The notes below the pieces were generated by a model that was not told where the DNA came from, searched no databases, and saw only the letters and a list, made by a program, of their open reading frames with translations. Both the position numbers and the translations under genes were made by a program. Of a DNA stretch of 64,000 nt, positions 8,148-56,886 are shown one piece after another (within the stretch, counting starts at the first letter, position 1; every line of letters begins with the position of its first letter). Where the stretch lies: sequence record LC819005.1, one strand, 5' to 3'.

Positions 8148-8999
8148 ATGCTTGAGGCAATGGTCATGGCCGCCGCTATTAAAGCAGCCACGGGCGGGCA
8201 ACAACTTTTTGACACAGTCGGTACAGCTAGTTTTGTCGTGCCGGCTACGGTTACGAAGATCTCTGCTGTCTGTGTGATGTCGGGTGCAAACGGTAGCGTA
8301 GGTGCTAACGTACCGGGTGGCGATGGCGGTGACTTGCGTTACGCAGTGAGTCTGGATGTAACACCGGGGGAGACTCTCACCATCTTTATTCCGGCGAGTA
8401 CTGCAACCACCTCAACACCATGCACAATCAGTCGTGGCGCTACAGTGCTGCTCTCTGCTGGCCGACTGGGTGTGGGCAGTACCGCGATCGGTGGAAACAT
8501 CGGTGGTGGTAACGGCGGTAACAAAGGTGTCTTCCAGGGATCGGGCTCGCCCTTCTCGGGAGCAGGCGGTGGCGCAGGCGGTTACGCTGGCAATGGTGGT
8601 AACGGCGGTAATGGCTCAGGTAACTCGCTAGGCACGCCGCCAACCGCTGGCAATGGTGGTGGCGGCGGCGGCGGTGGCGCAAACTGCTCGACTAGTAACT
8701 TCAGTTCGGGTATTGGTGGTGGCGGTGGTGGCGTGGGTCTGAAAGGCCAGGGCGCATCCGGTGCGGCCGGTACGCAGGGTAACCTGAATGCCAGTGTGGG
8801 CTTCACACCAGGTAAGGGTGGTAGTGGTGGCGCGGACGGTGAAAACAATCCGGGCAATCGCGGTTCAAACGGTGGCGGCTATGGCGCAGGCGCAGGCGGC
8901 TCGTTCACTGGCGCGGCTGGCATAGGCGGTAAGGCAGGTTGCCGGATTATCTGGGGCGATGGCCGCGCTTACCCGTCGACCAACACAGGCGACGTCTAA
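8148..8999 (+). CDS. Glycine-rich putative tail adhesin
   Basis: Start at MLEAMV (AGGAG RBS). Extensive GGGGG/GAGG tracts and C-terminal GxVRIIWG-like motif, typical of Gly-rich phage fibre-tip proteins. Confidence 0.75.
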   Translation: MLEAMVMAAAIKAATGGQQLFDTVGTASFVVPATVTKISAVCVMSGANGSVGANVPGGDGGDLRYAVSLDVTPGETLTIFIPASTATTSTPCTISRGATVLLSAGRLGVGSTAIGGNIGGGNGGNKGVFQGSGSPFSGAGGGAGGYAGNGGNGGNGSGNSLGTPPTAGNGGGGGGGGANCSTSNFSSGIGGGGGGVGLKGQGASGAAGTQGNLNASVGFTPGKGGSGGADGENNPGNRGSNGGGYGAGAGGSFTGAAGIGGKAGCRIIWGDGRAYPSTNTGDV

Positions 9000-9008
9000 C
9001 GAAACACA

Positions 9009-9047
9009 GACATAAAGGGCAGGGCTTTCGCCCTGCCTCCTATGCTG
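9009..9047. terminator. Bidirectional terminator-like hairpin between convergent genes
   Basis: GGCAGGGC-TTTC-GCCCTGCC flanked by TATGCTG (+) and TTTATGTC (-). Confidence 0.7.
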
Positions 9048-10856
9048 TCAAAGCGCTGTAATGGTGCCGTCAACGTTCAACTGGTATTTCGCACTATCGT
9101 AGCTGCTAGTCACCAGTCGAGGCGCGCCGTAGAAGTCATGAGGCTTTAGCCCTACGATTTCCTGGATCGAACCGCTCTTATACGCATAGACTTTAACAGC
9201 CTGTGCGTCAATGATGACGGTTCCTGGATTTGCCGGAGCCGCCGCAACGGCCGTTGCCGTCTGTGCTGAGGTCTTGTAGATCTTGCCCGTCAGGTTATCT
9301 ACCGTTTGGAGCTTACCATCACGCAAGTACAACAACGTGGCGACGTTCATCGCACGGGAGATCTTCTGGGTTTGCAGCGTAGACGAGAGCGACGCCTTGA
9401 TTGCACCGAACAGGCGCACCGATACGTTCCCACCCGGCGGCAGGTTGTACACAGTCCGAGCATCTTTCATCAACTGAGCGAATGACACCTTGCCATTCCG
9501 GAAACCAATCTCAGGACGCACTACCGTCGAGATCTTGCTGTAGGTGAACGGTACAGCCAAAGCCAGCGTCAACGTATCGCCATTCTTAACCGGCGTGACA
9601 TTCGCACCCGTTCCATACCAGTACGTAAAGGCTTGACCGCCGGTGTAATACTGCTCGCCGATACGCTTGCCGTTCAGCAGGATTTCACCCCATACCGTAC
9701 CGAGTGACGAACCATCCACGTTGGGCGCTAGATTCAGTGCACCAGCCGCACTGGCGTACACATTACCGCTATTGACTTCCGGCTGTCCCGTGGACGGATT
9801 CACCGAGCTGGCAAAGAGGATTTCAGCGCCTGCGATGTTGTACGTGTAACGTGCCGTGATCACCGAACCATCTGAAAGGGTCGCCAACAGATTGATGGTG
9901 TTCAGACCCGACGTAGAGACCGTCTGAGAGGGCACAGAAGCGGGCGCATACAAAGTCGTAGGGGTAACGACGACGATCGACTCCGAAGCCCCTGCAGCGA
10001 TGTTATCGCTGTCTGACATGCCTGCATACAACGGATGGTCGCCGTAGTGCGAACGGATGAAGCCAACGTTCACTGGCGTGCGGTCCACGTTCCCCGTCAG
10101 GTAGGTGCCGAACTTCACCGCGACGGCATTGGCGGTCTTGAAGAACGCCGGATCACTGGTGGTGACATCCGCAATCGAGGTGAGGTTGTAGCCGTGGTCG
10201 GTGATGATGATAATGCCGTTTCCATTCTCCCGGAACGTAGCGATGTCATTCACCGCTTGTGCTGTGATGCCGGGTGTGCCCTGCCATTGCGAACTCAGCA
10301 CCAGTACCAGCGCAAACTGTTCGTAGTACGCCAGATTCGGATTCAGCTGGCCGCCGCCGTAATCATCCGGTGCGACAAAGGTAGGAGTGAAGCCCGCCAG
10401 GCCACAGACTTCAGTAAGCGTGTCGAAGAAGCCGGTGCTGCTAGTCGCCGAATTCGCTTTCACCGCATAGCTTGCGGGCGAGATCACATCGCCCATGATC
10501 AGCACTTTCTTGTTGCCCGCGGCAACCTTGGTCGGGTTGGCACACCACTTCAGTGCGTTGTACAGATACTTACACGCCGGCGACAGCGCAGCAAAGTTGG
10601 CGGGGTTACGGGTGTTCGCACTGTTGTAGAACTTCGGGAAGCCGCCATCGTACACCACGCGACCCTTACCGTCTTCGGTCACCGCGATAAACGGATTGGC
10701 CGGAGTGAGGGTGTCGTAAGCGATGTATTTCGAGATCGACGGCGGAGCACCGTTTTTCGTGACCGCGACCTGGGTGATGTCCGCGCTAAACGAGAACGAC
10801 ACCGTCTGGGCATTCAAATACGCCCCAGGTGCAACACTAGGAGTAATCGTCGCCAT
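9048..10856 (-). CDS. Putative virion structural / tail-associated protein
   Basis: 602 aa, rich in T/S/G/A beta-strand-like segments; within the tail module. Function inferred from context. Confidence 0.6.
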   Translation of the reverse strand: MATITPSVAPGAYLNAQTVSFSFSADITQVAVTKNGAPPSISKYIAYDTLTPANPFIAVTEDGKGRVVYDGGFPKFYNSANTRNPANFAALSPACKYLYNALKWCANPTKVAAGNKKVLIMGDVISPASYAVKANSATSSTGFFDTLTEVCGLAGFTPTFVAPDDYGGGQLNPNLAYYEQFALVLVLSSQWQGTPGITAQAVNDIATFRENGNGIIIITDHGYNLTSIADVTTSDPAFFKTANAVAVKFGTYLTGNVDRTPVNVGFIRSHYGDHPLYAGMSDSDNIAAGASESIVVVTPTTLYAPASVPSQTVSTSGLNTINLLATLSDGSVITARYTYNIAGAEILFASSVNPSTGQPEVNSGNVYASAAGALNLAPNVDGSSLGTVWGEILLNGKRIGEQYYTGGQAFTYWYGTGANVTPVKNGDTLTLALAVPFTYSKISTVVRPEIGFRNGKVSFAQLMKDARTVYNLPPGGNVSVRLFGAIKASLSSTLQTQKISRAMNVATLLYLRDGKLQTVDNLTGKIYKTSAQTATAVAAAPANPGTVIIDAQAVKVYAYKSGSIQEIVGLKPHDFYGAPRLVTSSYDSAKYQLNVDGTITAL

Positions 10857-10864
10857 CGCTTACC

Positions 10865-12743: not shown

Positions 12744-12746
12744 CTC

Positions 12747-16697: not shown

Positions 16698-17396
16698 TTA
16701 CGACGTGAAGGGTGCACTCGGAGGCGTGAATGCTCCGGTGTAGAGTGCCGTGCCGTTCACAGTGCGAAACTCGTCAATGTATCCGTTGTAGTTAAAAGGA
16801 GTCCCGGTGGTCGAGAGCGCCCAGTTACCAATCATCATCGGACCCGCTACATTGCCAAAGGTCGCACTGCTAACACGAGTCCCAGCCGACACTCCGTCTA
16901 TCCACAGAGTGTAAAGATTGTTCTGCCGTGTGAGCGCAATGTGTTGCCACTGACCCGCTTTGAGACCACCCGCGTTGACAATCTTGGTGGCGGGTTGCGG
17001 CTCCCCATCCAGCTTCAAGTAGGCAGTGCCCTGATAAAACTCCAAATAGGCTGATTGGGCGGTATTGCCACTTGTCGCATACTTACAGACTGGCACCGAA
17101 TCGTAGTTAGTAAAACTAACCAGATATGACCAGAATTCCAACGTGAAGTCGGTGGTGAACCGCAGAGTAGGATCATCAGGAACAGTGACGCAGCTATTCC
17201 AGTTTGGAAGAGCGAGAGATGACCCGCCAAATTTAGACTGAATCGTGCTAAGCGCCGCTCCTGCCGATGCCGTCAACGGTCGACCACTAACATCAACAAT
17301 CCCTGTAGAGCCATTCGGTCCGTCCAAATGCAGCAGCATCCGGTTAGGATCTCCGAGCGGTCTGGGTTTTCCGGTTGCTAAGATGAGTTCAAGCAC
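16698..17396 (-). CDS. LamG/ConA-like lectin domain tail protein
   Basis: LLHLDG, SKFGGSSL, DFTLEFW, WQHIALTRQ, YIDEFR and FTPPSAPF motifs; GTG start giving MLELIL. Confidence 0.85.
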   Translation of the reverse strand: MLELILATGKPRPLGDPNRMLLHLDGPNGSTGIVDVSGRPLTASAGAALSTIQSKFGGSSLALPNWNSCVTVPDDPTLRFTTDFTLEFWSYLVSFTNYDSVPVCKYATSGNTAQSAYLEFYQGTAYLKLDGEPQPATKIVNAGGLKAGQWQHIALTRQNNLYTLWIDGVSAGTRVSSATFGNVAGPMMIGNWALSTTGTPFNYNGYIDEFRTVNGTALYTGAFTPPSAPFTS

Positions 17397-17405: not shown

Positions 17406-18707
17406 TTAGCTTATTGAGAGAAATTGAGCGGGATCAAGTGCTGTGCCTTTGACCAACCTCACCTTGCGAATGTAGCCATTAAAATAGCCACTCGAAATGG
17501 TGTCGCCGCTATTACCCAACCAAATGCTGTTTGCAGTCCCAACAATCTTTACCGTTGTCGCAAAGCTGTTTTCCAGTACTCCGTTCACATACAGTTTTAA
17601 GCTACCTGCTTTACGGAGAAGGGCTAGGTGAGTGGGAGAATTATAAGCAATCTGCGAGACGCTAGACATCACCGGAAACGTACCGTTGAGTCCAACGTTA
17701 TAGCGAGTCGAATCGGCACTCTGATGACCTGCAAAAATCGATAGAGAACCGTTAGCCGCCCATGTGCTGTAATTGCTAAACAGAGCCGGAAAAGATACGG
17801 TTCGTGCAACTGGCTTGATCACCATTTCCAGCGTAAAGTCATTCGGAAGAATGAAGTCGGGCTGGGTAGCGGTCATCGTCACATACTGGGATGAGCCATT
17901 CAGCCCAATACCGTTTCCAGCAGTTGCCGCCGCGCCACCAATGCTGGAGACACCGCGAGCGTAGTGGCTGGCGTCAGTCATCGCACCAGCCATTGCATTG
18001 ATATCGATCAACGTATCGTAGTGATCGAAAGGAGCGGTGGGTGGAGTAAAATCACCATCGTACAACACTGCGCCGACAATGCGGGTTTCATCCATGAAAC
18101 CTGGGAACTGCGAAGCCGTGTTGTATTGGTTACCACCAATAGTCCAGGTTCCGCCAGATAAACCAAAACCCAGTGCAGAAGTGACAGAGAGTTGCGTCAC
18201 TCCGTTGATGTAACCGGTATAGACACCGTTCTTCTTGACCACCGCCCAATGATTCCATTGGTTCAGTGGCCATGAACTGGTGGGTGCGAGGCTACGCCAG
18301 CCCGCGCCATCGGTCAGATAGATACCCAGACCCATGTTGCTCTGCTGACCAATCGTTGTCTGATGGGTACTGTCGTTAGCCGTCTTACAGCTAAACATTG
18401 TGGTATCGCCAAAGCCAGCATTCCGGTATGCCCAGCCTTCGATGGTGAAATTATCCGAAAGTGTGAGCCATACACTGGTTGCGATCTGAAGATTTCCGTT
18501 GCCCGGATTGAAAGACGAGCCGCCAAACTTGGACTGCGCGGTGCTCAGCGCTGCGGAGCCAGACACGGACGTCGTGAGTCCATTGTCTTCCGGAATCGTC
18601 GTCGAGCCATTGGTCCCGTCAAAGTGGACCAGCATGAAAGTTTTAAGATCATTCGACGGCGCCACGACCGCCGGCTTCTTATAAGTAGAGAGAAGAGCTT
18701 CGAGCAT
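17406..18707 (-). CDS. Tandem LamG/ConA-like lectin tail protein
   Basis: Two LamG repeats (NFTIEGW...WNHWAVVK...MDETR; DFTLEMV...HLALLRK...YIRKVR); probable start MLEALL. Confidence 0.85.
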   Translation of the reverse strand: MLEALLSTYKKPAVVAPSNDLKTFMLVHFDGTNGSTTIPEDNGLTTSVSGSAALSTAQSKFGGSSFNPGNGNLQIATSVWLTLSDNFTIEGWAYRNAGFGDTTMFSCKTANDSTHQTTIGQQSNMGLGIYLTDGAGWRSLAPTSSWPLNQWNHWAVVKKNGVYTGYINGVTQLSVTSALGFGLSGGTWTIGGNQYNTASQFPGFMDETRIVGAVLYDGDFTPPTAPFDHYDTLIDINAMAGAMTDASHYARGVSSIGGAAATAGNGIGLNGSSQYVTMTATQPDFILPNDFTLEMVIKPVARTVSFPALFSNYSTWAANGSLSIFAGHQSADSTRYNVGLNGTFPVMSSVSQIAYNSPTHLALLRKAGSLKLYVNGVLENSFATTVKIVGTANSIWLGNSGDTISSGYFNGYIRKVRLVKGTALDPAQFLSIS

Positions 18708-18750
18708 GTTGGAATAATCCAAGGAATTTAGCCGTACACATACGATTCAG

Positions 18751-18780
18751 CGGCATAGAGGGCTGGTTTTCCCAGCCCTC
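18751..18780 (-). terminator. Hairpin + TATGCCG element
   Basis: GAGGGCTGGG/CCAGCCCTC stem then TATGCCG. Confidence 0.7.
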
Positions 18781-19805: not shown

Positions 19806-19826
19806 GGTAAAGCTACCTTAAATTCG

Positions 19827-20843
19827 TTAGAGCACCAATTCCATCACCGGACGCCAGCCACCGTAGAGAATCACTCCCGACGTGTTGTTCACCGTAACCG
19901 TCACGTTTGGCGCAGTGGTCGTACAGGCAGAGTAACAGCCAGGATTCCACCCTGCGCCAGCGGTGCTGATTCGACCACCGCGAACTGGAACGATGGTGTT
20001 TGCCATCAGCGGCGCTTGCTGACACATATCGCCGAGCGCTACGCCAGAAGCGTAGGGACCAAATTCATCGCGCAGATTAGTGAAAGTGCCGTACGCTTTG
20101 TCGCCAGTCCAGCGCAATGAATACGCACCTACAGTGCTCACAACGGCACCACAGATGTCATCGTACTCGCTGGCCATCGGTGCAGCCAGCAACGAGTTTC
20201 CGAGACCTAGCCCGGGGGCTGCATTCTGGGTCGCAGGCAATCCCTGAAGCATGCGAGGAATATACGAGAACCCGCCAATAGTCATCGGCTTGTACTGGTT
20301 GGTTGCTGTTCCGCCGCTCGGGACAATCAAGCCATTGTCGTTGGTGCCGTACACGAGACCAAGACCGTACAGGGTATTGTAGGTAATGCCGAAACGCGCA
20401 GCGTTTTTGGCAATAAACAATACCTTGCCCTTGTAGGCCATCTTGATCCAGTCTTTGTCAGGCGGTGAACTGCCGGCCAAGGTAAGCGCAGTGCCCAGAT
20501 TAGCGTAGGTAATAAAGTCAGCCGAGCGCACCGGACCAAAATAGCCGTAGTCCCAATCACCCGCCTGCAGTGTTTGCGGACCCGGACCCGTGTCTGCCGG
20601 AGCCACCGCACGGATCACGATATTCTTGGTGAGGACAATGTCCGTGCCTTTAACACTACCGATGCGATAGTAATACTTCGTCCCACGCACCGCTGTGGTA
20701 TCGACGTAAGTGTTAGCACCTGCGGCGACCGAAGCGAGCGGAGTCGGTAAGGGCGTATCGGGAATCGGACTGGTATCGCGGTACACATTCACGCTATCTT
20801 CCAGTCCGGTGTTGTAGTTGTTCCAATTGAGAGTGAGATTCAT
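19827..20843 (-). CDS. Putative virion structural protein, paralog of 18795..19805
   Basis: FN3-like YVDTTAVRGTKYYYRI; GPGPQTLQAGDWDYGYFG; WIKMAYKGKVLF; WRPVMEL. Confidence 0.75.
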   Translation of the reverse strand: MNLTLNWNNYNTGLEDSVNVYRDTSPIPDTPLPTPLASVAAGANTYVDTTAVRGTKYYYRIGSVKGTDIVLTKNIVIRAVAPADTGPGPQTLQAGDWDYGYFGPVRSADFITYANLGTALTLAGSSPPDKDWIKMAYKGKVLFIAKNAARFGITYNTLYGLGLVYGTNDNGLIVPSGGTATNQYKPMTIGGFSYIPRMLQGLPATQNAAPGLGLGNSLLAAPMASEYDDICGAVVSTVGAYSLRWTGDKAYGTFTNLRDEFGPYASGVALGDMCQQAPLMANTIVPVRGGRISTAGAGWNPGCYSACTTTAPNVTVTVNNTSGVILYGGWRPVMELVL

Positions 20844-20856: not shown

Positions 20857-21852
20857 TTATGGGTTAAAGGTGGCGGTTATCGCGCTTACCGGTCGCTGGT
20901 TAGCGTTAGCCGGCACCGGGAGGCTCAGTCGCGTGATCCCAGTCAATGCAGACATAACCGTACCTACTGAGCGCTGTGCAGTTGTTTTAGGCACGCCTGC
21001 AGTCAGACGTTGAACGTTGGTCAGATCTCCCGCACCGGTCACGCTCGGTCCGCCATAACCGGATCGGAAACCAGACGGAATAACAAAAGTATTACGGAAA
21101 GCGAACAGGTCGTTCGGCATCACTAATTCCAACACCGGGCGCCAAGCCATCAGCGCATTAGTGTTAGTCTTAAGAATAGACTGATACGAATTAATCGTAC
21201 CGTTACCGCGACCCACGTAAGAGGTTGTGGCCGACGACATGGACTCGCGCGTGATATCCCAATTACTGGCGGTCATGCCCAAGTCCAGACCTGCTTGATA
21301 ATTCGCCCAACGATCTGCGGGATAGTTAGCAACCGCTATAGAGGCTACGCGGTAGAGCAAGTCCGTCCACATCGATGCACGGACGGTGGTTTCATTTTGC
21401 GTTGAAGTGGTTGCATTAATCAACGTAGGATCAACTGCATCACCTGTGATTGTCTGGACTTTAAAGCGGTACGGCCCTGTAGTCGCAAAGGTGAGTTGAT
21501 TGACTGGCGCGCCATTGTTATACGTGCCGGTATCGTCTCGACCGTAAATAGCGCCCAGCCCATAAAGCGCATTCCAAGAAATGCCGGTGATCATCGGCTT
21601 CTTGGCAATAAACAGATAACGCCCTTTGTAAGCGAACTTAAGCCAGGTAGCGCCATTGACCTGAGTGTAGCCCACCATGCCGCCTAACTGGGCAGCTAGC
21701 CCTGTAGAGCTGAGTAAGTCGCTCGAATTCACCTCACCAAAGAAACCAAGGGTTTGGTCACCGAACAACATCTGCTGCGGACCGGGGCCGGAGTCGAGAT
21801 AAACAGGTTTATTCCCCGCGCCTCCGCCACTCATTAAAAGTAATTCTAACAT
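20857..21852 (-). CDS. Putative virion structural protein, same family, with MLELLL N-terminus
   Basis: GPGPQQMLFGDQTLGFFG, WLKFAYKGRYLF, WRPVLEL. Confidence 0.75.
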   Translation of the reverse strand: MLELLLMSGGGAGNKPVYLDSGPGPQQMLFGDQTLGFFGEVNSSDLLSSTGLAAQLGGMVGYTQVNGATWLKFAYKGRYLFIAKKPMITGISWNALYGLGAIYGRDDTGTYNNGAPVNQLTFATTGPYRFKVQTITGDAVDPTLINATTSTQNETTVRASMWTDLLYRVASIAVANYPADRWANYQAGLDLGMTASNWDITRESMSSATTSYVGRGNGTINSYQSILKTNTNALMAWRPVLELVMPNDLFAFRNTFVIPSGFRSGYGGPSVTGAGDLTNVQRLTAGVPKTTAQRSVGTVMSALTGITRLSLPVPANANQRPVSAITATFNP

Positions 21853-21928
21853 GGGACTCCCCCAAAAGCTTACATAGCATTTACAACAGCATAAAGACCG
21901 GGGCTGCCCCGGTCCCCACGCGTGAGTC

Positions 21929-23086
21929 TTACTGCAGGATTTCCTTCAACGTGCTATCGGCCAACGCCAACCCAGTTACCGTCTTCAGCGTATCGAAGTT
22001 GGTGCCGTCATTGCTACCCTGAATCACAAGGCTGGAAGGCTGTTGGCTCGCACCAGTGAGTGCCGCAATCTTGATCGAGTCAAACGACCGCGCTTGTCCC
22101 AGATCCACCATCCACCAGTGCGGTGGTGTCTGACTTCCGGATGACCAGCGATGTTCAGGAAGCCCGTCGATGATGCCGTCGATTGCATTGCCTGGCGCTT
22201 GTGGAAGCCCGGTCAGGGTATAGTAGCTGCTGGCCGTGGCGACAGTGCCGCTCTTGGTACACCAGTTTGTGCCGGTCGCCGAATCAATAACCTGCACTTC
22301 ACTCAACGTACCGTATCCACCACCGATCGGCGCAATGCTGTTCAATCGAACATAGCGATACGAGCCCGAGTTCGGGAACGAGGTCGGCGGCGTGAACGAT
22401 GCATTGGTGTAACGCGCAATCCCGTTGGTAAGACGGAAAGCATCTATCAGACCCGGAAAGGAGAAACCTCCGCCACCAGTACGCGCGCCTACCGTTGGCT
22501 TATAACCGCTGTACCACGGCACAGCCACACCGGAACCAATACTGCCCTGAGCGATACGAACACCGTCCAGATATATCCAGATCGTCGCACCCTGTCTAAC
22601 CGCCGCGATGTGTGACCAGACGTTTTGCGTCATGGAAACGGACGCAGAGGTCAGATCCAGCAACGTCCCAGAGTCCCCACGGATCAAAACTCGTGGCTTG
22701 GCTCCAGAGGCAATGTTACCGAGCAACTCGAATGAAAAGATTTGCTGGTTGCCCGTAGTCTCGCCCTGGTAGTAGATGCCACAATCGTTACTCGTGGGGA
22801 TGTCCGAAATCCGATTAACGATGGCTTCAATCGTCCAGTCATTGGTGCCGAGGTTAAACTCGCTGGCATTGGGCGTGTTGTAGTTCGAGAGCGAACTCCG
22901 GAAGTCAACTGCCGTGCCGTGCGTGTCTGTAACAAAGGAAGGAGAACCTCCCGCAGTCATCGCGTGACCTTTTACATCGGTGCCGTTGCCATTAAACTGC
23001 ATCAACAACTTGACGTACGAGAAATAGGGATCGGCTGGCGCAATCGATACGCCAGGAGGCTTCCCGCCCAACAAAAATTCCAACAT
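21929..23086 (-). CDS. LamG + discoidin (F5/8 type C)-like tail adhesin
   Basis: DWTIEA...WSHIAAVRQG...IDAFRLT followed by ASSYY...NAIDG...WSS...WWMVDLG; probable start MLEFLL. Confidence 0.85.
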   Translation of the reverse strand: MLEFLLGGKPPGVSIAPADPYFSYVKLLMQFNGNGTDVKGHAMTAGGSPSFVTDTHGTAVDFRSSLSNYNTPNASEFNLGTNDWTIEAIVNRISDIPTSNDCGIYYQGETTGNQQIFSFELLGNIASGAKPRVLIRGDSGTLLDLTSASVSMTQNVWSHIAAVRQGATIWIYLDGVRIAQGSIGSGVAVPWYSGYKPTVGARTGGGGFSFPGLIDAFRLTNGIARYTNASFTPPTSFPNSGSYRYVRLNSIAPIGGGYGTLSEVQVIDSATGTNWCTKSGTVATASSYYTLTGLPQAPGNAIDGIIDGLPEHRWSSGSQTPPHWWMVDLGQARSFDSIKIAALTGASQQPSSLVIQGSNDGTNFDTLKTVTGLALADSTLKEILQ

Positions 23087-23122
23087 AGCGAGCACCGGCT
23101 AGAAATATTCACATAGGATTTG

Positions 23123-23160
23123 CGTCATAAAAGCCGGGGTCTCCCCCGGCCCTTATGCCG
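23123..23160. terminator. Symmetric hairpin + TATG element
   Basis: GCCGGGG/CCCCGGC stem with TTATGCCG on + and TTTTATGACG on -. Confidence 0.7.
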
Positions 23161-23167: not shown

Positions 23168-23821
23168 TTAGACGTCGAGCGTTGCCGGAATGGCCGGCAG
23201 TTCTGCGAGCGTCGTTGCCGCGTCAATCTCCGACTTCAGCGCCCAGCTCGCGCCGTACACTGCGGACACGCGCTGGAAGGCCGCGTTCGACATAGCAACC
23301 ACGCCATTGGCCGAAACCTGCACGACCTTGTTTTCCAGCGTACGGAAAGGCAGCAACGCATCGCCCTGACCTGCTGCGATCATGCCATCAGCCGTCACGC
23401 GCAGACCCGTGATGTTGATACAGTCACGGTCACGCAGCTGCACGCCTTGTACGCCATCTTCACCACCGAAGTCGTACTGGAAGCCGTTAGCCAGCGTGGT
23501 GTCGCGCAGTGTATCGACTTGCGCCGACAGCGTCGGTTTCTGAGCTGCGAGTTGAGCTGCGAGTTCGTCCGCGGAGAAAGCACGGGCGGTCCATTGCTGG
23601 GTCCACACGCCTTCCACTTGAACCGGCGCTGCTTCGGCCACCACATCGCCCGTCGGTTGAGCGGTCGGAGCAACCACAGCGTAGCCGAGGTCTTCGATGA
23701 TCGTTTCATCGGGTTCCGCAGCAAAGCTGGTGTTCGGATTGTCCTGGCGGATCTTGAACAACGACACCGGATAGTCCAGTGTGTCGACCTTGATCAGCAA
23801 GGTGCTTGCAGTGATGTTCAT
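23168..23821 (-). CDS. Tail fibre assembly chaperone (DUF4376-like)
   Basis: N-terminal NPNTSF...LGYAVV...W.Q.W and C-terminal LRDTTLANGF...QLRDRD...SWALKSEIDAA; directly downstream of the fibre. Confidence 0.75.
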   Translation of the reverse strand: MNITASTLLIKVDTLDYPVSLFKIRQDNPNTSFAAEPDETIIEDLGYAVVAPTAQPTGDVVAEAAPVQVEGVWTQQWTARAFSADELAAQLAAQKPTLSAQVDTLRDTTLANGFQYDFGGEDGVQGVQLRDRDCINITGLRVTADGMIAAGQGDALLPFRTLENKVVQVSANGVVAMSNAAFQRVSAVYGASWALKSEIDAATTLAELPAIPATLDV

Positions 23822-23872
23822 CTCTTTATTCCTGATGGGTGCGGGACGAGCCGAAGCCCGCCCCTAGGTTAC

Positions 23873-26800
23873 TTAGGCAGTTGCGCCCACCGAGCCCGTC
23901 CACTTCGTACCATCCCAGAGCAGGATGACGTTGGTGTACGTTGCGCCCAGCGTCGGAGCCGTACCGCCGCTCCAGCTGATGGTCGGCCAGGTGATCGCTG
24001 CGGCATTACCCGTCACGCACACCACGACCGTCATCGCACGGTTGGCACCCGGTGCGTTAGCAAACGCGAGAGTCTTGGCCGTAGCCGCGCTCACCGTGAA
24101 TGCCTGGTTCACAGCCAGGTCCAGCGTCGCCGTTGCAGCAGCAATCGGCAAGTCGTAACGGTCCAGGCGCTTCAGACCGATCGTCGTGCCGTTGTTGTAC
24201 GCAACGTAGTAGGCGCTGTCGTTCGGCGCCAGCGGCGTCGCGAGCGTAGCAAGGTCAGTCCAGTTGCCACCCTTCTGCACGTAAGCCTTGGTGTCGTTCG
24301 GAGCAGCGACCGTGGTAAGCGTCGACAGATCCGTCCAGTTACCACCCTTTTGAACATAGGCTTTCGTATCGTTCGGGGCTTTCGAATCGGTGAGCGTCGA
24401 AAGGTCAACCCAAGCGCCAGTCTTTTGGACATACGCTTTGGTATCATTCGGTGCAGGGGTTTGCGTGACCGTAGCCGCGTCCACCCAGGCACCACCCTTC
24501 TGCACATAGGCCTTCGAGTCATTCGGAGCGAGTGCCGTAGCGAGGGTCGCGAGATCAGTCCAGTTTCCGCCCTTTTGGACGTACGCCTTCGCATCATTCG
24601 GTGCCTGCGCTTGCTGAACCCATGCGCCATCCTTACGGATGTACACACCGTGATCCAGCGGAGCCTCACCCACGACCGGTGCCGGCAGCGGCACCCATGC
24701 GCCGTTCTCACGAACGTACATGGTGTCATCGAGGTTGGCGTCGTACACGTTACCGCCACCCAGGAAGCCGAGCCAGCTCCAGGCCACCGTGGTGGTTTTC
24801 TGGAAGAAGCGCAGCGTCGAGCTGTTGAGGAAGTAGTCGCCCACCACCCCGTCAGCCGGGTTCGGATCGCGACCGAGCACAATCCAGCGCGTGCCTTGGT
24901 CACCACGATCACCCTTCAGACCCTGGATACCCTGTACGCCCTGCAGACCTTGCAAGCCCTGCAGACCGCGATCACCCTTGGGACCCTGAATCAGACCCAC
25001 ATCGATGAACGCCGTGCCCGTCCACGCCCAACCATGCAGCGTGTCGGAAGCGATGTACATGTCGCCAGCGTTGGTCGCCGAACCCGGCAGAGCCGAGCTG
25101 GTAGCCACCGTACCGAGGATCTTCACGCCCGGGCCCATTGCACCCGTATCGCCTTGGTCGCCCTTGTCGCCCTTGTCGCCTTTCAGACCTTGAATACCCT
25201 GGATACCTTGCAGACCTTGGTCGCCTTGCAAACCTTGCAGACCCTGATCGCCCTGGTCACCCTTCCATTGACCTGCGTCAACCCAGACCGTACCGTTCCA
25301 CGACCAGAGATGACCTGCTACCGTCCAGGCGTCGCCTGCGGTGTTGCCAGTAGCCGGAAGACTGCCAGTATCGGGCTTGGTGCCGAGGACCTTGACGTTG
25401 GCACCAGTATCACCCTTGTCGCCCTTATCCCCCTTCACGCCTTGGATACCTTGAATGCCTTGGAGACCGGTGTTACCCGTGTCACCCTTATCACCCTTGT
25501 CTCCTTTAACGCCTTGAATACCCTGCAGACCCTGATCGCCCTTCGGACCTTGAATCATGCCGAGGTCTTCGAACGCAGCACCCGTCCAGCCCCAGAAATG
25601 GCCCTGGATCAGGTAACCATCACCAATGGCTTCGGTGGTGTGTGCGGGCAGCTGCGAGGAATCCGCAAACGTACCGAGAATTTTGATACCCGGACCAAGG
25701 TCACCCTTCACACCTTGAACACCCTGAATACCCTGAATCCCTTGGATACCCTGGTCGCCCTTGTCTCCCTTATCGCCTTTATCGCCCTTGACACCCTGAA
25801 TACCTTGGATGCCTTGGTCACCCTTCGGACCGATGAACGGACCGAGATCCTGCCACGCATTGCTGGAGAACAGGAACAGGTGCGTGCCGGCGATGTACGC
25901 GGTTTGATCCGGAGGCGTAGCGGGCAACGAAGCTTGATCTGCCACCGTGCCCGTGATCACGAGACCACGACCGGTCGGACCCGTCAGACCCGTGTCGCCC
26001 TTTGCGCCCTTGAGCGAAGCGAGCCACTGAGTCTGCGTACCCACGAAGCCGTTGTCGACTGCCGTCTGGTAAGCCGAATCACCTGCCACACCTTGGAGCG
26101 ACGCAAGCCATTGTGCTTGCGTACCAACAAAGCCACCAGCCACTGCCGCCGTATAAGCGGAGTCGCCGTTTGCACCCTTGTCGCCGGTGTCACCCTTGAC
26201 ACCTTGGATACCCTGCACACCTTGCAAGCCTTGCGGACCTTGCACGGGACCCACGTCGATGAACGCGGAACCGGTCCATGCCCAGCCGTGGAGCGTATCC
26301 AGGGCAATGTACATGTCACCAGCCGTACCCGAGCTGCCCGGGAGTGCTGCGCTGTTGGCAACGGTGCCCAGGATTTTCACGCCAGGACCCATCGGGCCGA
26401 CGTTACCTTGATCACCCTTATCACCCTTCGGACCTTGCGGACCGACGAGCGTAGCCAACCAGGCCGATTGCGAACCGACGAAGCCGCTGTCCAGCGCGAG
26501 CTGATACGCCGTCTTACCAACCAGCGATTGCAGCCAGGCAGCCTGCGTGCCAACGAAACCATTCGCCTGAGCGACTTGGTAGGCGGTCTTACCGTTGAGC
26601 GACGTGATCCACTGCGAGAGCGTCATCGTACCCGGGATCAGACCTGCATCCTTCGCGAGCTGGTAGGCCGACTTACCATCCGGACCCACTTGACCCACCG
26701 GCACCCAGCTCGTGCCGTCCCACACCCACATCACTGCATCGATGATGAACGCGTCACCTGCGGTGTTGCCTTCCGGACCCGGGGGGAGATCACCCACCGT

Positions 26801-27940
26801 CTGGAACGAACCCAGCACTTTCAGGCCGATACCATCCGAGCCGTGAAGCGAATCCATCCAGTCTTGTTCCGTGCCGCTGAAGCCCGCGAGCAGCGCGAGT
26901 TCATAGGCCGACTTACCTTCGGGCCCTTGCAGGTTACCGAGGTCCGTCCACACACCACCCGAGAGCGCCCAGAATTCCGGTCCGATCAGGTAGCAGTCAC
27001 CTTCTTGCGATTCGCCAACCGGCGGGAGCGACGCTTGGTCACCCACTGCGCCGAGCAGACGTGCGCCATTGCCCATCGGGCCTTGCGGGCCTGCAGCACC
27101 ATCAGCGCCGTCATCGCCCTTCGGACCCTTGAGTGAGGCCAGGTACTCGGCTTGCGTACCCACGAAACCGCCAGCGACGGCCAGTTCGTAGGCGGACTTG
27201 CCGTCCGTACCATTCGTACCGTTCGTGCCATCAGCGCCCTTCGCGCCGGTGTCACCCTTGACACCCTGGTTGCCTTGCAGGCCTTGAATACCTTGAATGC
27301 CCTGATCGCCCTTCACGCCTTTCAGCGAGGCAACCCAGGCAGATTCAGAGCCGACAAAACCACCAGCGACAGCCGACTCATACGCCGACTTACCAATAGC
27401 GCCGTCAGCGCCGTTGGTGCCGTTCGTACCGTCATGACCGTCCGCACCCTTCAGGCTAGCCAACCACTGCGCTTGCGTTCCGACAAAGCCGCCCAGTACA
27501 GCGAGTTCATAAGCGCTCTTACCCGCTGCGCCATCCGAACCGCTCGTACCGGTATCGCCCTTGTCACCTTTGTCACCTTTAAGACCTTGGATACCTTGGA
27601 TACCCTGGTCTCCCTTGGCGCCGACAAGGCTGGCAAGCCACTGGGCTTGCGTGCCGCCATAACCACCGGCTTGCGCCAGTTCGAAAGCGGATTTGCCATT
27701 CGTACCATCGGCACCTTTGGCACCGACCAGCGACGCAAGCCATTGAGCCTGCGTGCCGCTATAGCCGCCGTCAACGGCGACCTGGTAAGCGGATTTACCC
27801 GCCACCATCAACTGCGCCAGGGTGAACTTAACGTTCTTGCCACCCTGGATGGCCTCGACCACTTCCGCACCAGTGATGGCTGCTGCGTCAGGGAGGTCAG
27901 AGATCCGGTAATACAGTGCGGGATCGAGTGTATCACTCAT
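23873..27940 (-). CDS. Long collagen-like tail fibre protein (fibre A, 1355 aa)
   Basis: Gly-X-Y runs, GKSAYxxA...WLASL linkers, ~45-aa knob modules, 25-aa APND repeats and a C-terminal tip domain. Confidence 0.9.
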   Translation of the reverse strand: MSDTLDPALYYRISDLPDAAAITGAEVVEAIQGGKNVKFTLAQLMVAGKSAYQVAVDGGYSGTQAQWLASLVGAKGADGTNGKSAFELAQAGGYGGTQAQWLASLVGAKGDQGIQGIQGLKGDKGDKGDTGTSGSDGAAGKSAYELAVLGGFVGTQAQWLASLKGADGHDGTNGTNGADGAIGKSAYESAVAGGFVGSESAWVASLKGVKGDQGIQGIQGLQGNQGVKGDTGAKGADGTNGTNGTDGKSAYELAVAGGFVGTQAEYLASLKGPKGDDGADGAAGPQGPMGNGARLLGAVGDQASLPPVGESQEGDCYLIGPEFWALSGGVWTDLGNLQGPEGKSAYELALLAGFSGTEQDWMDSLHGSDGIGLKVLGSFQTVGDLPPGPEGNTAGDAFIIDAVMWVWDGTSWVPVGQVGPDGKSAYQLAKDAGLIPGTMTLSQWITSLNGKTAYQVAQANGFVGTQAAWLQSLVGKTAYQLALDSGFVGSQSAWLATLVGPQGPKGDKGDQGNVGPMGPGVKILGTVANSAALPGSSGTAGDMYIALDTLHGWAWTGSAFIDVGPVQGPQGLQGVQGIQGVKGDTGDKGANGDSAYTAAVAGGFVGTQAQWLASLQGVAGDSAYQTAVDNGFVGTQTQWLASLKGAKGDTGLTGPTGRGLVITGTVADQASLPATPPDQTAYIAGTHLFLFSSNAWQDLGPFIGPKGDQGIQGIQGVKGDKGDKGDKGDQGIQGIQGIQGVQGVKGDLGPGIKILGTFADSSQLPAHTTEAIGDGYLIQGHFWGWTGAAFEDLGMIQGPKGDQGLQGIQGVKGDKGDKGDTGNTGLQGIQGIQGVKGDKGDKGDTGANVKVLGTKPDTGSLPATGNTAGDAWTVAGHLWSWNGTVWVDAGQWKGDQGDQGLQGLQGDQGLQGIQGIQGLKGDKGDKGDQGDTGAMGPGVKILGTVATSSALPGSATNAGDMYIASDTLHGWAWTGTAFIDVGLIQGPKGDRGLQGLQGLQGVQGIQGLKGDRGDQGTRWIVLGRDPNPADGVVGDYFLNSSTLRFFQKTTTVAWSWLGFLGGGNVYDANLDDTMYVRENGAWVPLPAPVVGEAPLDHGVYIRKDGAWVQQAQAPNDAKAYVQKGGNWTDLATLATALAPNDSKAYVQKGGAWVDAATVTQTPAPNDTKAYVQKTGAWVDLSTLTDSKAPNDTKAYVQKGGNWTDLSTLTTVAAPNDTKAYVQKGGNWTDLATLATPLAPNDSAYYVAYNNGTTIGLKRLDRYDLPIAAATATLDLAVNQAFTVSAATAKTLAFANAPGANRAMTVVVCVTGNAAAITWPTISWSGGTAPTLGATYTNVILLWDGTKWTGSVGATA
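24200..24660 (-). repeat. Coding tandem repeats of ~75 bp (APNDxKAYVQKGGxWxDL)
   Basis: Five near-complete 25-aa units plus degenerate flanking copies in fibre A. Confidence 0.9.
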
Positions 27941-55073: not shown

Positions 55074-55129
55074 AGCTTATTACTTCCTTTTTTGGGTTAG
55101 GATGAGATACTGGATTGTACCTCATCTAA

Positions 55130-55137
55130 GTAATATG
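55130..55137 (-). promoter_or_regulatory. Putative early promoter (CATATTAC)
   Basis: Recurrent motif, 57 nt upstream of the 55073 start. Confidence 0.55.
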
Positions 55138-55160
55138 CTGTTGATTAATTTTGGAATCGA

Positions 55161-55574: not shown

Positions 55575-55656
55575 TACTGTTTCCTCGGACGGATATAAAG
55601 TATCTTGTGTGTCAGGATAACCTGACCGTTTCAACCCACATTAGAAGGGTGCGGGA

Positions 55657-56100
55657 ATGGCTATGAGAATTGCCTTTTGGAAAGGCACCGATCCGGGGTT
55701 CTCCGGTGTAATCGACCGCGCGGTCCGTTGGTGGACGCACGGCATTTATTCGCATTGCGAACTGATCTTCAGCGATGGCTGGACGGGTTCGGCTTCGCAG
55801 AGCGACAAGGGCGTCGTATTGCTTCAGCGCCCGACCAACTACTACGATCCCAAGGACTGGGACCTGGTGGAGATTGAAGGGGACGAAGACTACGCGCGTG
55901 CGTGGTTCAAGAAGTACCGCGGCTCCCCATACGATCTGTTGGGTGACTTTGGTTTTGTGTGGCGGCCTTTCGTGGGTCTGGATGGCGCATTCTTCTGTTC
56001 GGAGGCAATTGCCAACGCACTGAAGTGGCCCGACGCTTGGCAATACAGTCCTCGTTTGCAGGCAAGCATCGTGGCTATCCCTAAGTATGTTCCTGCCTGA
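55657..56100 (+). CDS. Permuted papain-like (NlpC/P60, YiiX-like) hydrolase
   Basis: His before Cys: YSHCEL...GSPYDLLG...FFCSE...AL...SP. Confidence 0.75.
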   Translation: MAMRIAFWKGTDPGFSGVIDRAVRWWTHGIYSHCELIFSDGWTGSASQSDKGVVLLQRPTNYYDPKDWDLVEIEGDEDYARAWFKKYRGSPYDLLGDFGFVWRPFVGLDGAFFCSEAIANALKWPDAWQYSPRLQASIVAIPKYVPA

Positions 56101-56184
56101 TAAAAAAGATGTTGAGAGCCAGGGTGGGACGCCATCCTGGCTTTTATGCCCGCGATATCTTATGTCATCCTAGGAAATCCCACC

Positions 56185-56886
56185 ATGCTTGAGGCACTTT
56201 TAACTGTAAAGAAAGCGGCCGTTGCCCCGGGAGGGTGGCCGCAAGAACAGCCGCTTCTCGGCTTTAACTACGACCGCAATGCCAGCACCGGTACGACCGC
56301 AATCACTTCTTCTCATAGTGCTGGCCAGTTGATTGTCCCTGGTGTAGCACTGCCAGGTTACACCAAGGTGCTAAACGGTAACCAGCAATCTAACTCGTTC
56401 TCTCCGTCTGCAGCAATGGGCGTGGCGGCGGGTGACTTCACGATGGAAATGCGCGTGTTGCTGAAAGGCACCTCAGGCTACGTGCATTTGTGGTGGAGTA
56501 CGAGTAGCTTGTCTACTGGGATTCGTTGTGAGGACTCGGGCTATGGCGATCGACTCGTGCTATTTGTCGATGCGAATACCCACGTCTTTAATACCACGAA
56601 GACCAAGTCCGACATGCAGGTGTGGCGACATATCGTCATGCAGCGTAAGAACGGCAACCTCCAGTTCTTCTGGGACGGCGTGCGTTCCGGTATTGCTGCG
56701 GATCGTGGTGCTACGTACACTACCGCAGATCTTCCGGCAGCAGGCAGCCTGGCTAGCTTTACGGGTTCCGGTATCGGTTATGCTGGATACGGTGCTGGTT
56801 ACTGTTGCGCAGAGTGGGCATTCTACAATCGCGCCAAATATACAACGGGTGACTTCACGCCACCGTCGGGTGCTATTGCTCCCTGA
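56185..56886 (+). CDS. LamG/ConA-like putative adhesin outside the tail module
   Basis: Start MLEALL; GDFTMEM, WRHIVMQRKNG and FTPPSG motifs. Confidence 0.75.
   Translation: MLEALLTVKKAAVAPGGWPQEQPLLGFNYDRNASTGTTAITSSHSAGQLIVPGVALPGYTKVLNGNQQSNSFSPSAAMGVAAGDFTMEMRVLLKGTSGYVHLWWSTSSLSTGIRCEDSGYGDRLVLFVDANTHVFNTTKTKSDMQVWRHIVMQRKNGNLQFFWDGVRSGIAADRGATYTTADLPAAGSLASFTGSGIGYAGYGAGYCCAEWAFYNRAKYTTGDFTPPSGAIAP

What the first reader, a model, noticed from the sequence alone, without database searches (positions are those of the whole stretch)
8148..56886. Six dispersed adhesin-like genes share an N-terminal MLExL(L/I/V) peptide, suggesting interchangeable fibre tips
Seen: otherwise dissimilar proteins begin MLEAMV (8148, Gly-rich), MLELIL (17396, LamG), MLEALL (18707, 2x LamG), MLELLL (21852, GPGPQ family), MLEFLL (23086, LamG+discoidin) and MLEALL (56185, LamG). 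Each is followed by a short K/G/P-rich linker. Two lie on the opposite strand, outside the main module. Fibre A ends in a short tip domain with no obvious receptor-binding domain. Known: T2/T6-type phages attach a separate adhesin (gp38, with Gly-rich motifs) to the fibre tip through its N-terminus. Inference: the MLExL helix is a common docking tag that lets several alternative receptor-binding heads plug into one fibre tip, giving mixed or switchable host range.
Basis: partly seen in the sequence, partly recalled or inferred. Interest (0 to 1): 0.72.

Follow-up and report, generated by a model that had tools for sequence, protein, structure and literature searches.

The report
Shared docking tag on phage adhesins
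A giant Ralstonia phage puts the same six-residue N-terminal tag on thirteen otherwise unrelated binding proteins, most likely a common plug that fastens alternative host-recognition modules to the virus particle.

Summary
The window is Ralstonia jumbo phage FLC1-1B, a phiKZ-like phage. All six genes start M-L-E-x-(L/M/I)-(L/V) at the stated coordinates; the start at 17396 is GTG. Seven more tagged genes lie elsewhere in the genome, giving 13 against about 0.15 expected by chance. No non-structural gene carries the tag.

The tag heads three unrelated domain classes: LamG, glycine-rich, and a chimallivirus 'virion structural' core. Orthologues at 49-74% identity keep it, as do most homologues below 50% identity, and its codons vary synonymously. 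It is predicted (low confidence) as a five-residue helix on a flexible linker.

phiKZ gp83 and gp298 and PhiPA3 gp238 and gp360 carry it too, and all four are annotated virion proteins. Published transposon data show gp298 is needed for adsorption to certain strains. A common attachment tag on alternative adhesins is therefore well supported, by inference.

- Nothing shows docking on the fibre-A tip.
- The fibre's conserved neighbour is a DUF4376 protein.
- The same tip occurs in rV5-like phages, and no tagged gene follows the cassette in PVP-SE1.
- No relation to gp38 was detectable.

The closest precedent is the 7-11-residue docking peptides of K1-5/SP6/KP34 tailspikes. I rate it a new variant of a known kind.

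The parts
8148..8999 (+). gp136: tag (8148-8165), linker, then a glycine-rich domain protein (283 aa)
   Evidence: phrog_4474 E=6e-50. Paralogue of gp272 and gp273, which hit PF21722 Gly_rich_2.
16698..17396 (-). gp149: tag at a GTG start (17379-17396), linker, then one LamG domain (232 aa). The GenBank start at 17339 is probably too short.
   Evidence: The 74%-identical orthologue P0056/L015 and the 51%-identical P0057 both start ATG plus the tag.
17406..18707 (-). gp150: tag, linker, then two LamG domains (433 aa)
   Evidence: The L015 orthologue keeps the tag.
18738..18757 (-). Double TATG late-promoter-like element ending 30 nt upstream of the gp150 start
   Evidence: TATG is the phiKZ nvRNAP late consensus overlapping the transcription start (PMC7618050).
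18795..19805 (-). gp151: untagged paralogue of gp153, with an FN3-like N-domain in place of the tag
   Evidence: The same trio is found in L015, L016, RSL2 and Noxifer.
19827..20843 (-). gp152: second untagged paralogue of gp153
20857..21852 (-). gp153: tag (21835-21852), Gly-rich linker, then the core of the chimallivirus virion-structural family (331 aa)
   Evidence: AF2 model: helix 2-6, low-confidence linker 8-12, core 17-250 with pLDDT above 90. Relatives are annotated virion structural proteins.
21872..21893 (-). Double TATG late-promoter-like element ending 19 nt upstream of the gp153 start
21929..23086 (-). gp154: tag, linker, LamG, then an F5/8 type C (discoidin) domain (385 aa)
   Evidence: The L015 orthologue keeps the tag.
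23111..23129 (-). Double TATG late-promoter-like element ending 24 nt upstream of the gp154 start
23168..23821 (-). gp155: DUF4376 protein, the conserved downstream partner of the fibre gene
   Evidence: Pfam PF14301 E=7e-15. 26% identical over its full length to PVP-SE1 gp68, which follows the homologous fibre there. Same position in L015 and Noxifer.
23873..27940 (-). gp156 ('fibre A'): collagen-repeat fibre with foldon-like segments and a conserved C-terminal tip; homologue of phiKZ gp146
27964..28512 (-). gp157: DUF7941 (N-domain only) protein upstream of the fibre
   Evidence: Pfam PF25613 E=8e-11. The family is described in the Goslar preprint.
31369..34227 (-). gp161: second collagen-repeat fibre (N-terminal region like phiKZ gp145), with a different tip
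56145..56165 (+). Double TATG late-promoter-like element ending 19 nt upstream of the gp185 start
56185..56886 (+). gp185: tag (56185-56202), K/A/P/G linker, then a LamG-like domain (233 aa). The GenBank start at 56416 is probably too short.
   Evidence: Paralogue of gp99. Of 42 small homologues in clusters below 50% identity, 26 start M-x-E-x-h-h at residue 1.

Best explanation
Each tagged protein has three parts:
1. A six-residue N-terminal peptide: Met, Leu/Phe, Glu, any residue, Leu/Met, Leu/Met/Val. It is predicted, at low confidence, to form a short helix; its 1-2-5-6 hydrophobic spacing would make that helix amphipathic.
2. A flexible linker of about 6-15 residues rich in Gly, Ala, Lys and Pro.
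3. One or two ligand-binding domains.

I propose that the peptide is a virion-attachment (docking) tag specific to nucleus-forming jumbo phages (Chimalliviridae). It would plug into a repeated socket on a conserved, peripheral part of the particle. That would let many unrelated binding domains be mounted on one virion. The 13 tagged proteins of FLC1-1B would then be late-expressed accessory adhesins, each tuning adsorption to particular host strains.

Shown here: the motif, its genome-wide restriction to adhesin-like genes, its conservation, the domain content, the predicted helix plus linker, and the virion annotation of relatives.
Shown by others: phiKZ gp298, which carries the tag, is needed for adsorption to some strains.
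Inferred: the docking function itself, the single common socket, and mixed occupancy. The socket is not identified.
For: 1. Thirteen genes against about 0.15 expected, and no non-structural gene has the tag.
2. The same tag heads three unrelated domain classes.
3. Selection acts on the peptide, not the DNA. Leu2 uses CTT, CTC, TTA and TTG, Glu3 uses GAA and GAG, and one start is GTG.
4. Orthologues at 49-74% identity keep the tag. In an unselected set of 42 small gp185 homologues from clusters below 50% identity, Glu is at position 3 in 64%, L/M/I at position 5 in 83%, and 26 match fully.
5. The same domains carry other N-terminal modules in other phages: Mtd_N-like, FN3-like and other short leaders. 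At least three other leaders are likewise shared across these domain classes. That is the pattern expected of a swappable anchor.
6. The tag variant appears genome-specific, though the sample is small. Both phiKZ proteins have the same first seven residues, PhiPA3 has two M-F-E proteins, and contig L029 has two adjacent M-N-E genes.
7. The AF2 model of gp153 puts a helix at residues 2-6 on a low-confidence linker, detached from a confident core.
8. Relatives are annotated virion structural proteins: phiKZ gp83 and gp298, PhiPA3 gp238 and gp360, and BFVD hits.
9. A phiKZ orf298 transposon mutant fails to adsorb to two wild strains but adsorbs normally to PAO1 (bioRxiv 10.1101/2025.11.23.690004).
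10. TATG late-promoter-like elements lie 19-30 nt upstream of four tagged genes in the window.
11. Short N-terminal docking peptides are an established device in other phages (PMC6872550).
Against: - No binding partner was found and no complex could be modelled with the tools at hand.
- Neither gp83 nor gp298 appears in the phiKZ cryo-EM atlas or in the PDB.
- The helix has only about pLDDT 50.
- None of the FLC1-1B proteins has been shown in virions. The LamG and glycine-rich members have no virion-verified relatives.
- Duplication within the LamG family inflates the count.
- The closest named relative, RP12, has none of these genes, so they are dispensable for the basic particle.
- Six residues is very short for a stable interface.
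Confidence: 0.6

Rival explanations
1. One reading: the tag docks specifically on the C-terminal tip of fibre A (gp156), as T2/T6 gp38 sits on gp37. The tagged proteins would then be interchangeable fibre-tip heads.
For: - The tagged gp153-type gene lies one or two genes downstream of the gp156-type fibre in FLC1-1B, L015 and Noxifer. Hit coordinates suggest the same for PhiEaH1 and Ea277G. It lies further downstream in L016.
- The tip is conserved at 91%, 43%, 36% and 60% identity in L015, L016, phiKZ gp146 and Noxifer, all of which have tagged genes.
- RP12 lacks both this tip and every tagged gene.
- A tip about 45% identical across phages of very different hosts looks more like a structural socket than a receptor binder.
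Against: - The gene conserved immediately after the fibre is DUF4376 (gp155), not a tagged gene.
- The fibre-plus-DUF4376 pair with the same tip exists in rV5-like PVP-SE1 with no tagged gene in the cassette.
- phiKZ gp83 and gp298, and 8 of the 13 FLC1-1B genes, are far from the fibre gene.
- A trimeric tip offers few sites for 13 proteins.
- No gp38-type homology was found.
- The phyletic argument rests on one negative genome.
Confidence: 0.15
2. The socket is on the peripheral baseplate or its DUF7941 filament network. The tag plus linker would dock on a DUF7941 N-domain (gp157, gp71), in the way the preprint predicts one DUF7941 protomer's linker docks on the next.
For: - gp157 is a DUF7941 protein with the N-domain only, encoded next to the fibre module. 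gp71 is a weaker second copy.
- The Goslar preprint reports AlphaFold-predicted peptide-to-N-domain docking. It also reports DUF7941 proteins in hundreds to thousands of copies at the baseplate periphery, some fused to carbohydrate-binding domains. Many equivalent sites would suit 13 ligands.
- The region is unresolved in the phiKZ and Goslar maps. That would explain why gp83 and gp298 were not seen.
Against: - This is purely circumstantial.
- RP12 appears to keep a gp157 homologue although it has no tagged genes.
- No sequence likeness between DUF7941 linkers and the tag was examined.
Confidence: 0.15
3. The tag is a transient signal. It would be recognised by an assembly chaperone or a sorting step in the infected cell and would not be part of the final attachment.
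For: - The peptide is short, sits at the extreme N-terminus, and is conserved with an invariant-looking acidic residue, as targeting peptides often are.
- Chimalliviruses do sort proteins between compartments; this rests on established knowledge of the family.
Against: - Parallel short leaders occur on the same domain classes in other lineages, including a siphovirus-like tail module.
- No candidate chaperone co-occurs.
- Tail parts need no nuclear import.
Confidence: 0.07
4. There is no dedicated function. The shared start would be a relic of duplication or recombination, or a favourable translation-initiation context.
For: - Several members are paralogues.
- Four tagged genes in the window also share an upstream TATG element, so 5' ends may have travelled together.
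Against: - Codons differ synonymously while the residues are kept.
- The tag persists at 25-50% protein identity and from Ralstonia phages to Pseudomonas phages.
- It spans unrelated folds.
- The linker that follows is not conserved.
Confidence: 0.03

Closest known systems
Conserved N-terminal docking peptides of secondary tailspikes in K1E/K1-5/SP6-like and Klebsiella KP34/KP32-type phages (PMC6872550; PMC13352976)
   Same: A very short hydrophobic peptide at the extreme N-terminus (a heptapeptide in KP34-type phages; 7 or 11 residues in K1-5/SP6). It is conserved within a phage group while the rest of the protein varies, and it is thought, in KP32-type phages shown, to fasten a receptor-binding protein to an anchor.
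   Different: - Those are podoviruses with one or two trimeric beta-helix depolymerases docking on a T4gp10-like branching domain or an adaptor.
- Here it is a nucleus-forming jumbo myovirus with 13 small LamG, glycine-rich or lectin-like proteins.
- No T4gp10-like domain and no anchor were found, and the tag sequence is different.
phiKZ gp298, a conditionally essential tail-associated adsorption factor (bioRxiv 10.1101/2025.11.23.690004)
   Same: It carries the same tag; its first seven residues are identical to those of phiKZ gp83. It is a small protein with a binding-type (Kelch-like) domain, present at low abundance in virions, encoded away from the tail genes, and needed for adsorption only on some strains.
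   Different: It has a different domain class and no sequence homology to the FLC1-1B proteins outside the tag. The preprint passages I searched mention neither the shared N-terminus nor gp83.
T2/T6/S16 gp38 fibre-tip adhesin
   Same: The concept: a separate adhesin attached through its N-terminal part to a fibre, with glycine-rich sequence in the binding part.
   Different: - No gp38-type hit appeared in the Pfam, PHROG or PDB sequence searches.
- The gene directly after the fibre is a DUF4376 protein, not a tagged gene.
- Most tagged proteins are LamG, not glycine-rich.
DUF7941 'fibre cloud' of Chimalliviridae (Goslar preprint 10.64898/2026.04.21.720040)
   Same: Chimallivirus-specific, modular, and peripheral. 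Binding domains are attached to the virion through a small conserved N-terminal module. gp157 in this window is a member.
   Different: The tagged proteins have no DUF7941 domain. Their conserved module is 6 residues, not a globular domain.
Branched multi-RBP systems of the jumbo Klebsiella phages PhiK64-1 and RaK2 and of Menlow-type phages
   Same: Many receptor-binding proteins on one virion, several of them carrying conserved N-terminal peptides.
   Different: Those are large depolymerase tailspikes encoded in one cluster. Their conserved segments are longer and their anchors carry T4gp10-like domains.

Membership tests
T2/T6/S16 gp38-type fibre-tip adhesin | Sequence or profile homology to gp38 | tested here: not met
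   Pfam and PHROG scans of all tagged proteins, and a PDB sequence search with gp136, gave no gp38-type hit.
T2/T6/S16 gp38-type fibre-tip adhesin | Encoded immediately downstream of the distal fibre gene | tested here: not met
   The gene after gp156 is the DUF4376 protein gp155. Tagged genes start two genes further on or lie elsewhere in the genome.
T2/T6/S16 gp38-type fibre-tip adhesin | Glycine-rich motifs in the receptor-binding part | tested here: inconclusive
   gp273 reaches PF21722 Gly_rich_2 (E=8e-6). gp136 and gp272 belong to the same PHROG. This is a different family, and 10 of the 13 tagged proteins are not glycine-rich.
T2/T6/S16 gp38-type fibre-tip adhesin | Physical attachment to the fibre tip | not testable with these tools
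   No multimer prediction was available and no structure is known.
Short conserved-peptide secondary RBPs (K1-5/SP6/KP34 type) | A short N-terminal peptide conserved among RBPs of a phage group while the rest varies | tested here: met
Short conserved-peptide secondary RBPs (K1-5/SP6/KP34 type) | An anchor or adaptor protein with a T4gp10-like branching domain | tested here: not met
   Pfam and PHROG scans of the neighbouring module (gp155-gp161, gp137, gp147, gp148) show none. The rest of the genome was not scanned by profile.
Short conserved-peptide secondary RBPs (K1-5/SP6/KP34 type) | The receptor-binding part is a trimeric beta-helix depolymerase | tested here: not met
   The domains are LamG, F5/8C, Gly_rich_2 and a lectin-like core.
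Concanavalin A-like / LamG (PF13385) | Profile match above Pfam's gathering score | tested here: met
   gp149 55 bits, gp150 108, gp154 56, gp220 61, gp282 68, against a cut-off of 27.6. gp185 (21.8) and gp99 (20.0) fall below the cut-off. gp271 has no hit.
Chimallivirus 'virion structural protein' family of phiKZ gp83 / PhiPA3 gp238 (phrog_1062/3589/16120) | Profile and structural match of the core domain | tested here: met
   gp153: phrog_1062 E=6e-46, 28% identity to phiKZ gp83 over residues 1-241, and Foldseek E down to 7e-20 against BFVD models of chimallivirus virion proteins.
Chimallivirus 'virion structural protein' family of phiKZ gp83 / PhiPA3 gp238 | Presence in purified virions | not testable with these tools
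   Known only from the annotation of relatives. There is no proteome for FLC1-1B.
DUF7941 baseplate-filament family | PF25613 match | tested here: not met
   None of the tagged proteins matches. gp157 does (42 bits, cut-off 27). gp71 matches weakly.

The most novel reading that the evidence does not exclude
Nucleus-forming jumbo phages possess a general plug-and-socket system. A six-residue N-terminal tag (M-x-E-x-h-h) addresses any binding domain to a repeated site on the particle, and the tag variant co-evolves with that site within each genome. A single phage can then display a dozen or more alternative adhesins encoded all over its genome, which would be a major and so far undescribed determinant of chimallivirus host recognition.
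Probability: 0.45. Interest if true: 0.75.

Novelty: new variant of a known kind. Interest (0 to 1): 0.62.

Why it matters
How phiKZ-like phages recognise their hosts is still open. The peripheral baseplate and fibres are the unresolved parts of the two recent cryo-EM atlases. The one accessory adsorption factor found so far, phiKZ gp298, has no known place in the particle.

A sequence tag that picks out the whole set of such factors directly from a genome would turn dozens of 'hypothetical proteins' into a defined class. It finds 13 in FLC1-1B and 2 each in phiKZ and PhiPA3.

It would also tell structural biologists what short helix to look for in unassigned density. And it would show that the short-docking-peptide device known from small podoviruses has an independent counterpart in giant myoviruses.

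Finally, it corrects five gene starts in the FLC1-1B record.

Tried and rejected
- PDB sequence searches with gp150, gp153 and gp136 found nothing. phiKZ gp83 and gp298 hit only Kelch propellers, not phage entries.
- A single-sequence AF2 run of gp149 was useless, with mean pLDDT 34. In hindsight it wasted the second job.
- The PDB fold search of the gp153 model gave only weak likeness to FGE / C-type-lectin-like folds (best E=0.035, TM about 0.25-0.29). I treat this as a hint only.
- I tested whether the tag belongs to the gp131-135 fibre paralogues of phiKZ. It does not.
- I tested whether RP12 could give orthologous starts. It has none of these genes.
- A presence/absence comparison to find the socket (present in FLC1-1B and phiKZ, absent in RP12) returned no candidate. 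It used only the 100-kb stretch of phiKZ that was loaded at that point.
- The double TATG element is not enriched genome-wide: 10 found against about 20 in shuffles. It is notable only for where it sits.
- The terminator scan did not flag the GC-rich inverted repeats I saw upstream of the TATG elements.
- Considered and set aside:
  - Prohead-protease or capsid-targeting signal: the tag does not fit the known site forms, and the proteins have binding domains.
  - Secretion signal: the tag is too short.
  - An mRNA-level signal: synonymous variation argues against it.
- The last 3 kb of the genome (287001-290008) was not scanned.

Full report
**Identity of the window.** The window is bases 124001-188000 of Ralstonia phage FLC1-1B (LC819005.1, 290,008 bp). 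This is a phiKZ-like jumbo phage with split virion and non-virion RNA polymerases and the phiKZ structural gene set. The only paper on it is a genome announcement that does not discuss these genes.

**The observation.**
- All six starts are as described. The one at 17396 is a GTG codon.
- GenBank uses the same start for gp136, gp150, gp153 and gp154. It calls shorter starts for gp149 and gp185.
- The domain assignments hold: LamG_3 in gp149, gp150 (twice) and gp154 (plus F5/8 type C), and weakly in gp185. gp136 belongs to a glycine-rich PHROG. gp153 belongs to a chimallivirus virion-structural PHROG set.

**The set is larger than six.** A six-frame scan of 287 kb of the genome finds seven more genes with the tag: gp99, gp119, gp220, gp271, gp272, gp273 and gp282.
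- Together the 13 comprise seven with LamG profile matches (two of them below Pfam's cut-off) plus gp271, which matches no family. There are also three glycine-rich proteins and two of the gp153 type.
- Every other regex hit is an antisense or internal ORF, so no replication or metabolic gene carries the tag.
- From the proteome's own frequency of the pattern, 0.15 N-termini are expected. Because paralogues are not independent, the safe statement is that three unrelated domain families share it.
- Five GenBank starts (gp149, gp185, gp272, gp273, gp282) cut the tag off. Orthologues that begin with ATG plus the tag support the longer forms.

**Selection acts on the peptide.**
- The codons for Leu2 (CTT, CTC, TTA, TTG), Glu3 (GAA, GAG) and positions 4-6 differ freely among the paralogues.
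- In a syntenic 283-kb metagenomic relative (L015), the orthologues of gp153, gp154, gp150 and gp149 and a fifth LamG gene all keep the tag. The two orthologues that came back in the protein searches are 49% (gp153) and 74% (gp149) identical.
- Nineteen of 55 gp153 homologues start with it. The rest carry quite different N-terminal modules, such as Mtd_N-like or FN3-like domains.
- The closest glycine-rich homologues keep it, while distant ones have other leaders.
- The cleanest test is not selected by motif. It uses 42 small homologues of gp185, each representing a cluster below 50% identity and found through the domain. Position 1 is Met in 98%, position 3 is Glu in 64%, position 5 is L/M/I in 83%, and position 6 is L/M/I in 65%. 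Twenty-six match M-x-E-x-h-h exactly, and by eye most of the rest are register-shifted or near variants.
- Position 2 is the variable one: L 29%, N 17%, Q 14% in that set.
- In the motif-selected pool of 45 distinct tags, positions 7-12 show no conserved residue beyond a G/K/A/S/T/P bias. The invariance of positions 1 and 3 in that pool is by construction.

**Reach of the tag.**
- phiKZ (scanned from 10 kb to its end) has exactly two tagged genes, gp83 and gp298. Their first seven residues are identical although the proteins are otherwise unrelated. gp83 has the gp153-type core plus a Kelch propeller; gp298 is Kelch-like.
- PhiPA3 gp238 and gp360, RSL2 ORF185 (from a start four codons upstream of the annotated one) and Noxifer gp136 have it too.
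- A 7-kb metagenomic contig has two adjacent genes that both use an M-N-E variant. This hints that the variant is genome-specific.
- RP12, the nearest named relative, has neither the tag nor any homologue of the 13 proteins.
- The phiKZ fibre paralogues gp131-135 do not have it.

**What the proteins are.**
- phiKZ gp83 and gp298 and PhiPA3 gp238, gp237 and gp360 are annotated virion structural proteins. BFVD matches to the gp153 model are almost all chimallivirus virion structural proteins.
- A transposon study of phiKZ reports that gp298 is a low-abundance virion protein encoded away from the tail genes. Its loss abolishes adsorption to two wild P. aeruginosa isolates but not to PAO1.
- Neither gp83 nor gp298 is placed in the phiKZ cryo-EM atlas or present in the PDB. 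The atlas and the Goslar preprint both leave the peripheral baseplate and fibres partly unmodelled.
- In a siphovirus-like contig, a gp153-type protein with a different leader sits just after the tape-measure gene and two large downstream genes, in the order expected of Dit and Tal. That placement fits a distal tail role for this core.

**Shape of the tag.** The AF2 model of gp153, built from a 37-sequence alignment, has a helix at residues 2-6 (mean pLDDT of the first ten residues 51) and a low-confidence stretch at 8-12. The core at residues 17-250 is confident, mostly above pLDDT 90, and the C-terminal 80 residues are disordered. The hydrophobic residues at positions 1, 2, 5 and 6 would form one face of that helix; this is inference.

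**Parallel cases in other lineages.** Among the homologues retrieved, other short leaders are shared between the same domain classes:
- one leader on five gp153-type proteins and one glycine-rich protein;
- another on a LamG and a glycine-rich protein;
- a third on LamG and glycine-rich proteins.

So short lineage-specific N-terminal leaders in front of these domains look like a general habit. This matches the conserved-peptide model described for K1-5/SP6/KP34-type tailspikes, where peptides of 7 or 11 residues dock on an adaptor.

**The docking site.** gp156 is the homologue of phiKZ gp146. It has collagen repeats, foldon-like segments and a C-terminal domain of 110-135 aa.

In favour:
- The tagged gp153-type gene follows this fibre at one or two genes' distance in FLC1-1B, L015 and Noxifer. 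Hit coordinates suggest the same in PhiEaH1 and Ea277G.
- The tip is conserved in L015, L016, Noxifer and phiKZ.
- RP12, which has no tagged genes, has a mosaic fibre with the gp161-type tip instead.

Against:
- The conserved next gene is the DUF4376 protein gp155.
- The same fibre-plus-DUF4376 pair with the same tip (about 45% identity) occurs in rV5-like Vequintavirinae. In PVP-SE1 it lies between the capsid and neck genes, with no tagged gene after it.
- phiKZ gp83 and gp298 and most FLC1-1B tagged genes are unlinked to the fibre.
- The negative evidence rests on a single genome.

An alternative socket is the DUF7941 network of the peripheral baseplate. gp157 is a member, and the Goslar preprint predicts peptide-to-domain docking there. 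The site therefore remains open.

**Expression.** The pattern TATG, 9-14 bases, TATG(T/G) occurs five times in the window. Four copies end 19-30 nt upstream of the starts of gp150, gp153, gp154 and gp185. TATG overlapping the transcription start is the reported late-promoter consensus of the phiKZ non-virion polymerase. This fits late, structural expression. For gp185 it places the likely transcript start downstream of the alternative ATG at 56146.

**Verdict.**
- The core of the interpretation, a common attachment tag on alternative adhesins, is the best explanation (confidence about 0.6).
- The fibre-tip site and the gp38 kinship are not supported.
- I found no description of this tag in the papers searched. 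The device itself has clear precedents, so I rate it a new variant of a known kind.

Noticed in passing
window 23168-27940 (-); L025 4616-8052: The fibre gp156 plus the DUF4376 protein gp155 form a two-gene cassette shared with rV5-like Vequintavirinae (PVP-SE1 gp69 and gp68). The fibres are 35% identical and the DUF4376 proteins 26%. In PVP-SE1 the cassette lies between the major-capsid and neck genes. With the fibritin-type foldon segments, this raises the possibility that 'fibre A' is a neck or whisker-type fibre rather than a baseplate fibre.
   Followed up: partly
window 23876-24280 (-): The last ~135 aa of gp156 recur at the C-terminus of annotated tail fibres in 124 phage records with hosts spanning Salmonella, Cronobacter, Pectobacterium, Escherichia, Erwinia, Pseudomonas and Ralstonia. 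Many of the matches are 40-50% identical. That is unusually conserved for a fibre tip.
   Followed up: partly
RP12 NC_041911.1 150426-153695 compared with window 23873-27940 and 31369-34227: The RP12 fibre ORF153 is a mosaic. Its shaft is about 65% identical to gp156, but its C-terminal tip resembles that of the second fibre, gp161.
   Followed up: partly
window 18738-18757, 21872-21893, 23111-23129 (-); 56145-56165 (+); also 1433-1453 (-): A double TATG element (TATG, 9-14 nt, TATG T/G) ends 19-30 nt upstream of four tagged gene starts. By eye it is often preceded by a GC-rich inverted repeat. The same arrangement precedes gp273 outside the window. The fifth copy in the window (1433-1453) lies in an unannotated gap.
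   Followed up: partly
window 16698-17396 (-), 56185-56886 (+); genome 250629-251468, 251486-252334, 260166-260852 (-): Five GenBank CDS starts (gp149, gp185, gp272, gp273, gp282) appear to be called too far downstream. In gp185 and gp282 this removes part of the LamG domain.
   Followed up: yes
window 18795-20843 (-): gp151 and gp152 have the same core as gp153 but carry an FN3-like N-domain instead of the tag. One tagged gene followed by two or three FN3-type paralogues is conserved in L015, L016 and Noxifer, and by gene order and size in RSL2. This suggests a hetero-oligomer in which only one subunit carries the tag.
   Followed up: no
window 27964-28512 (-); genome 78664-79212 (-): gp157, and weakly gp71, are DUF7941 proteins. 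This is the chimallivirus-specific family recently proposed to form long baseplate-anchored filaments.
   Followed up: partly
proteins P0018, P0023, P0027, P0041, P0043, P0116; P0065, P0162; P0060, P0160: In other, non-chimallivirus lineages, different short N-terminal leaders are shared between gp153-type, LamG and glycine-rich proteins. Short lineage-specific leaders on these domains may therefore be widespread.
   Followed up: partly
L029 6310-7285 (+): Two adjacent genes on a 7-kb metagenomic contig both start with an M-N-E-x-L-L variant of the tag, but their sequences differ after it. This is a within-genome match of the tag variant.
   Followed up: no
window 1264-2303 and 3313-3677 (-): About 1 kb has no annotated gene, just upstream of a cluster of four tRNA genes (Tyr, Asn, Asp, Gln).
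   Followed up: no
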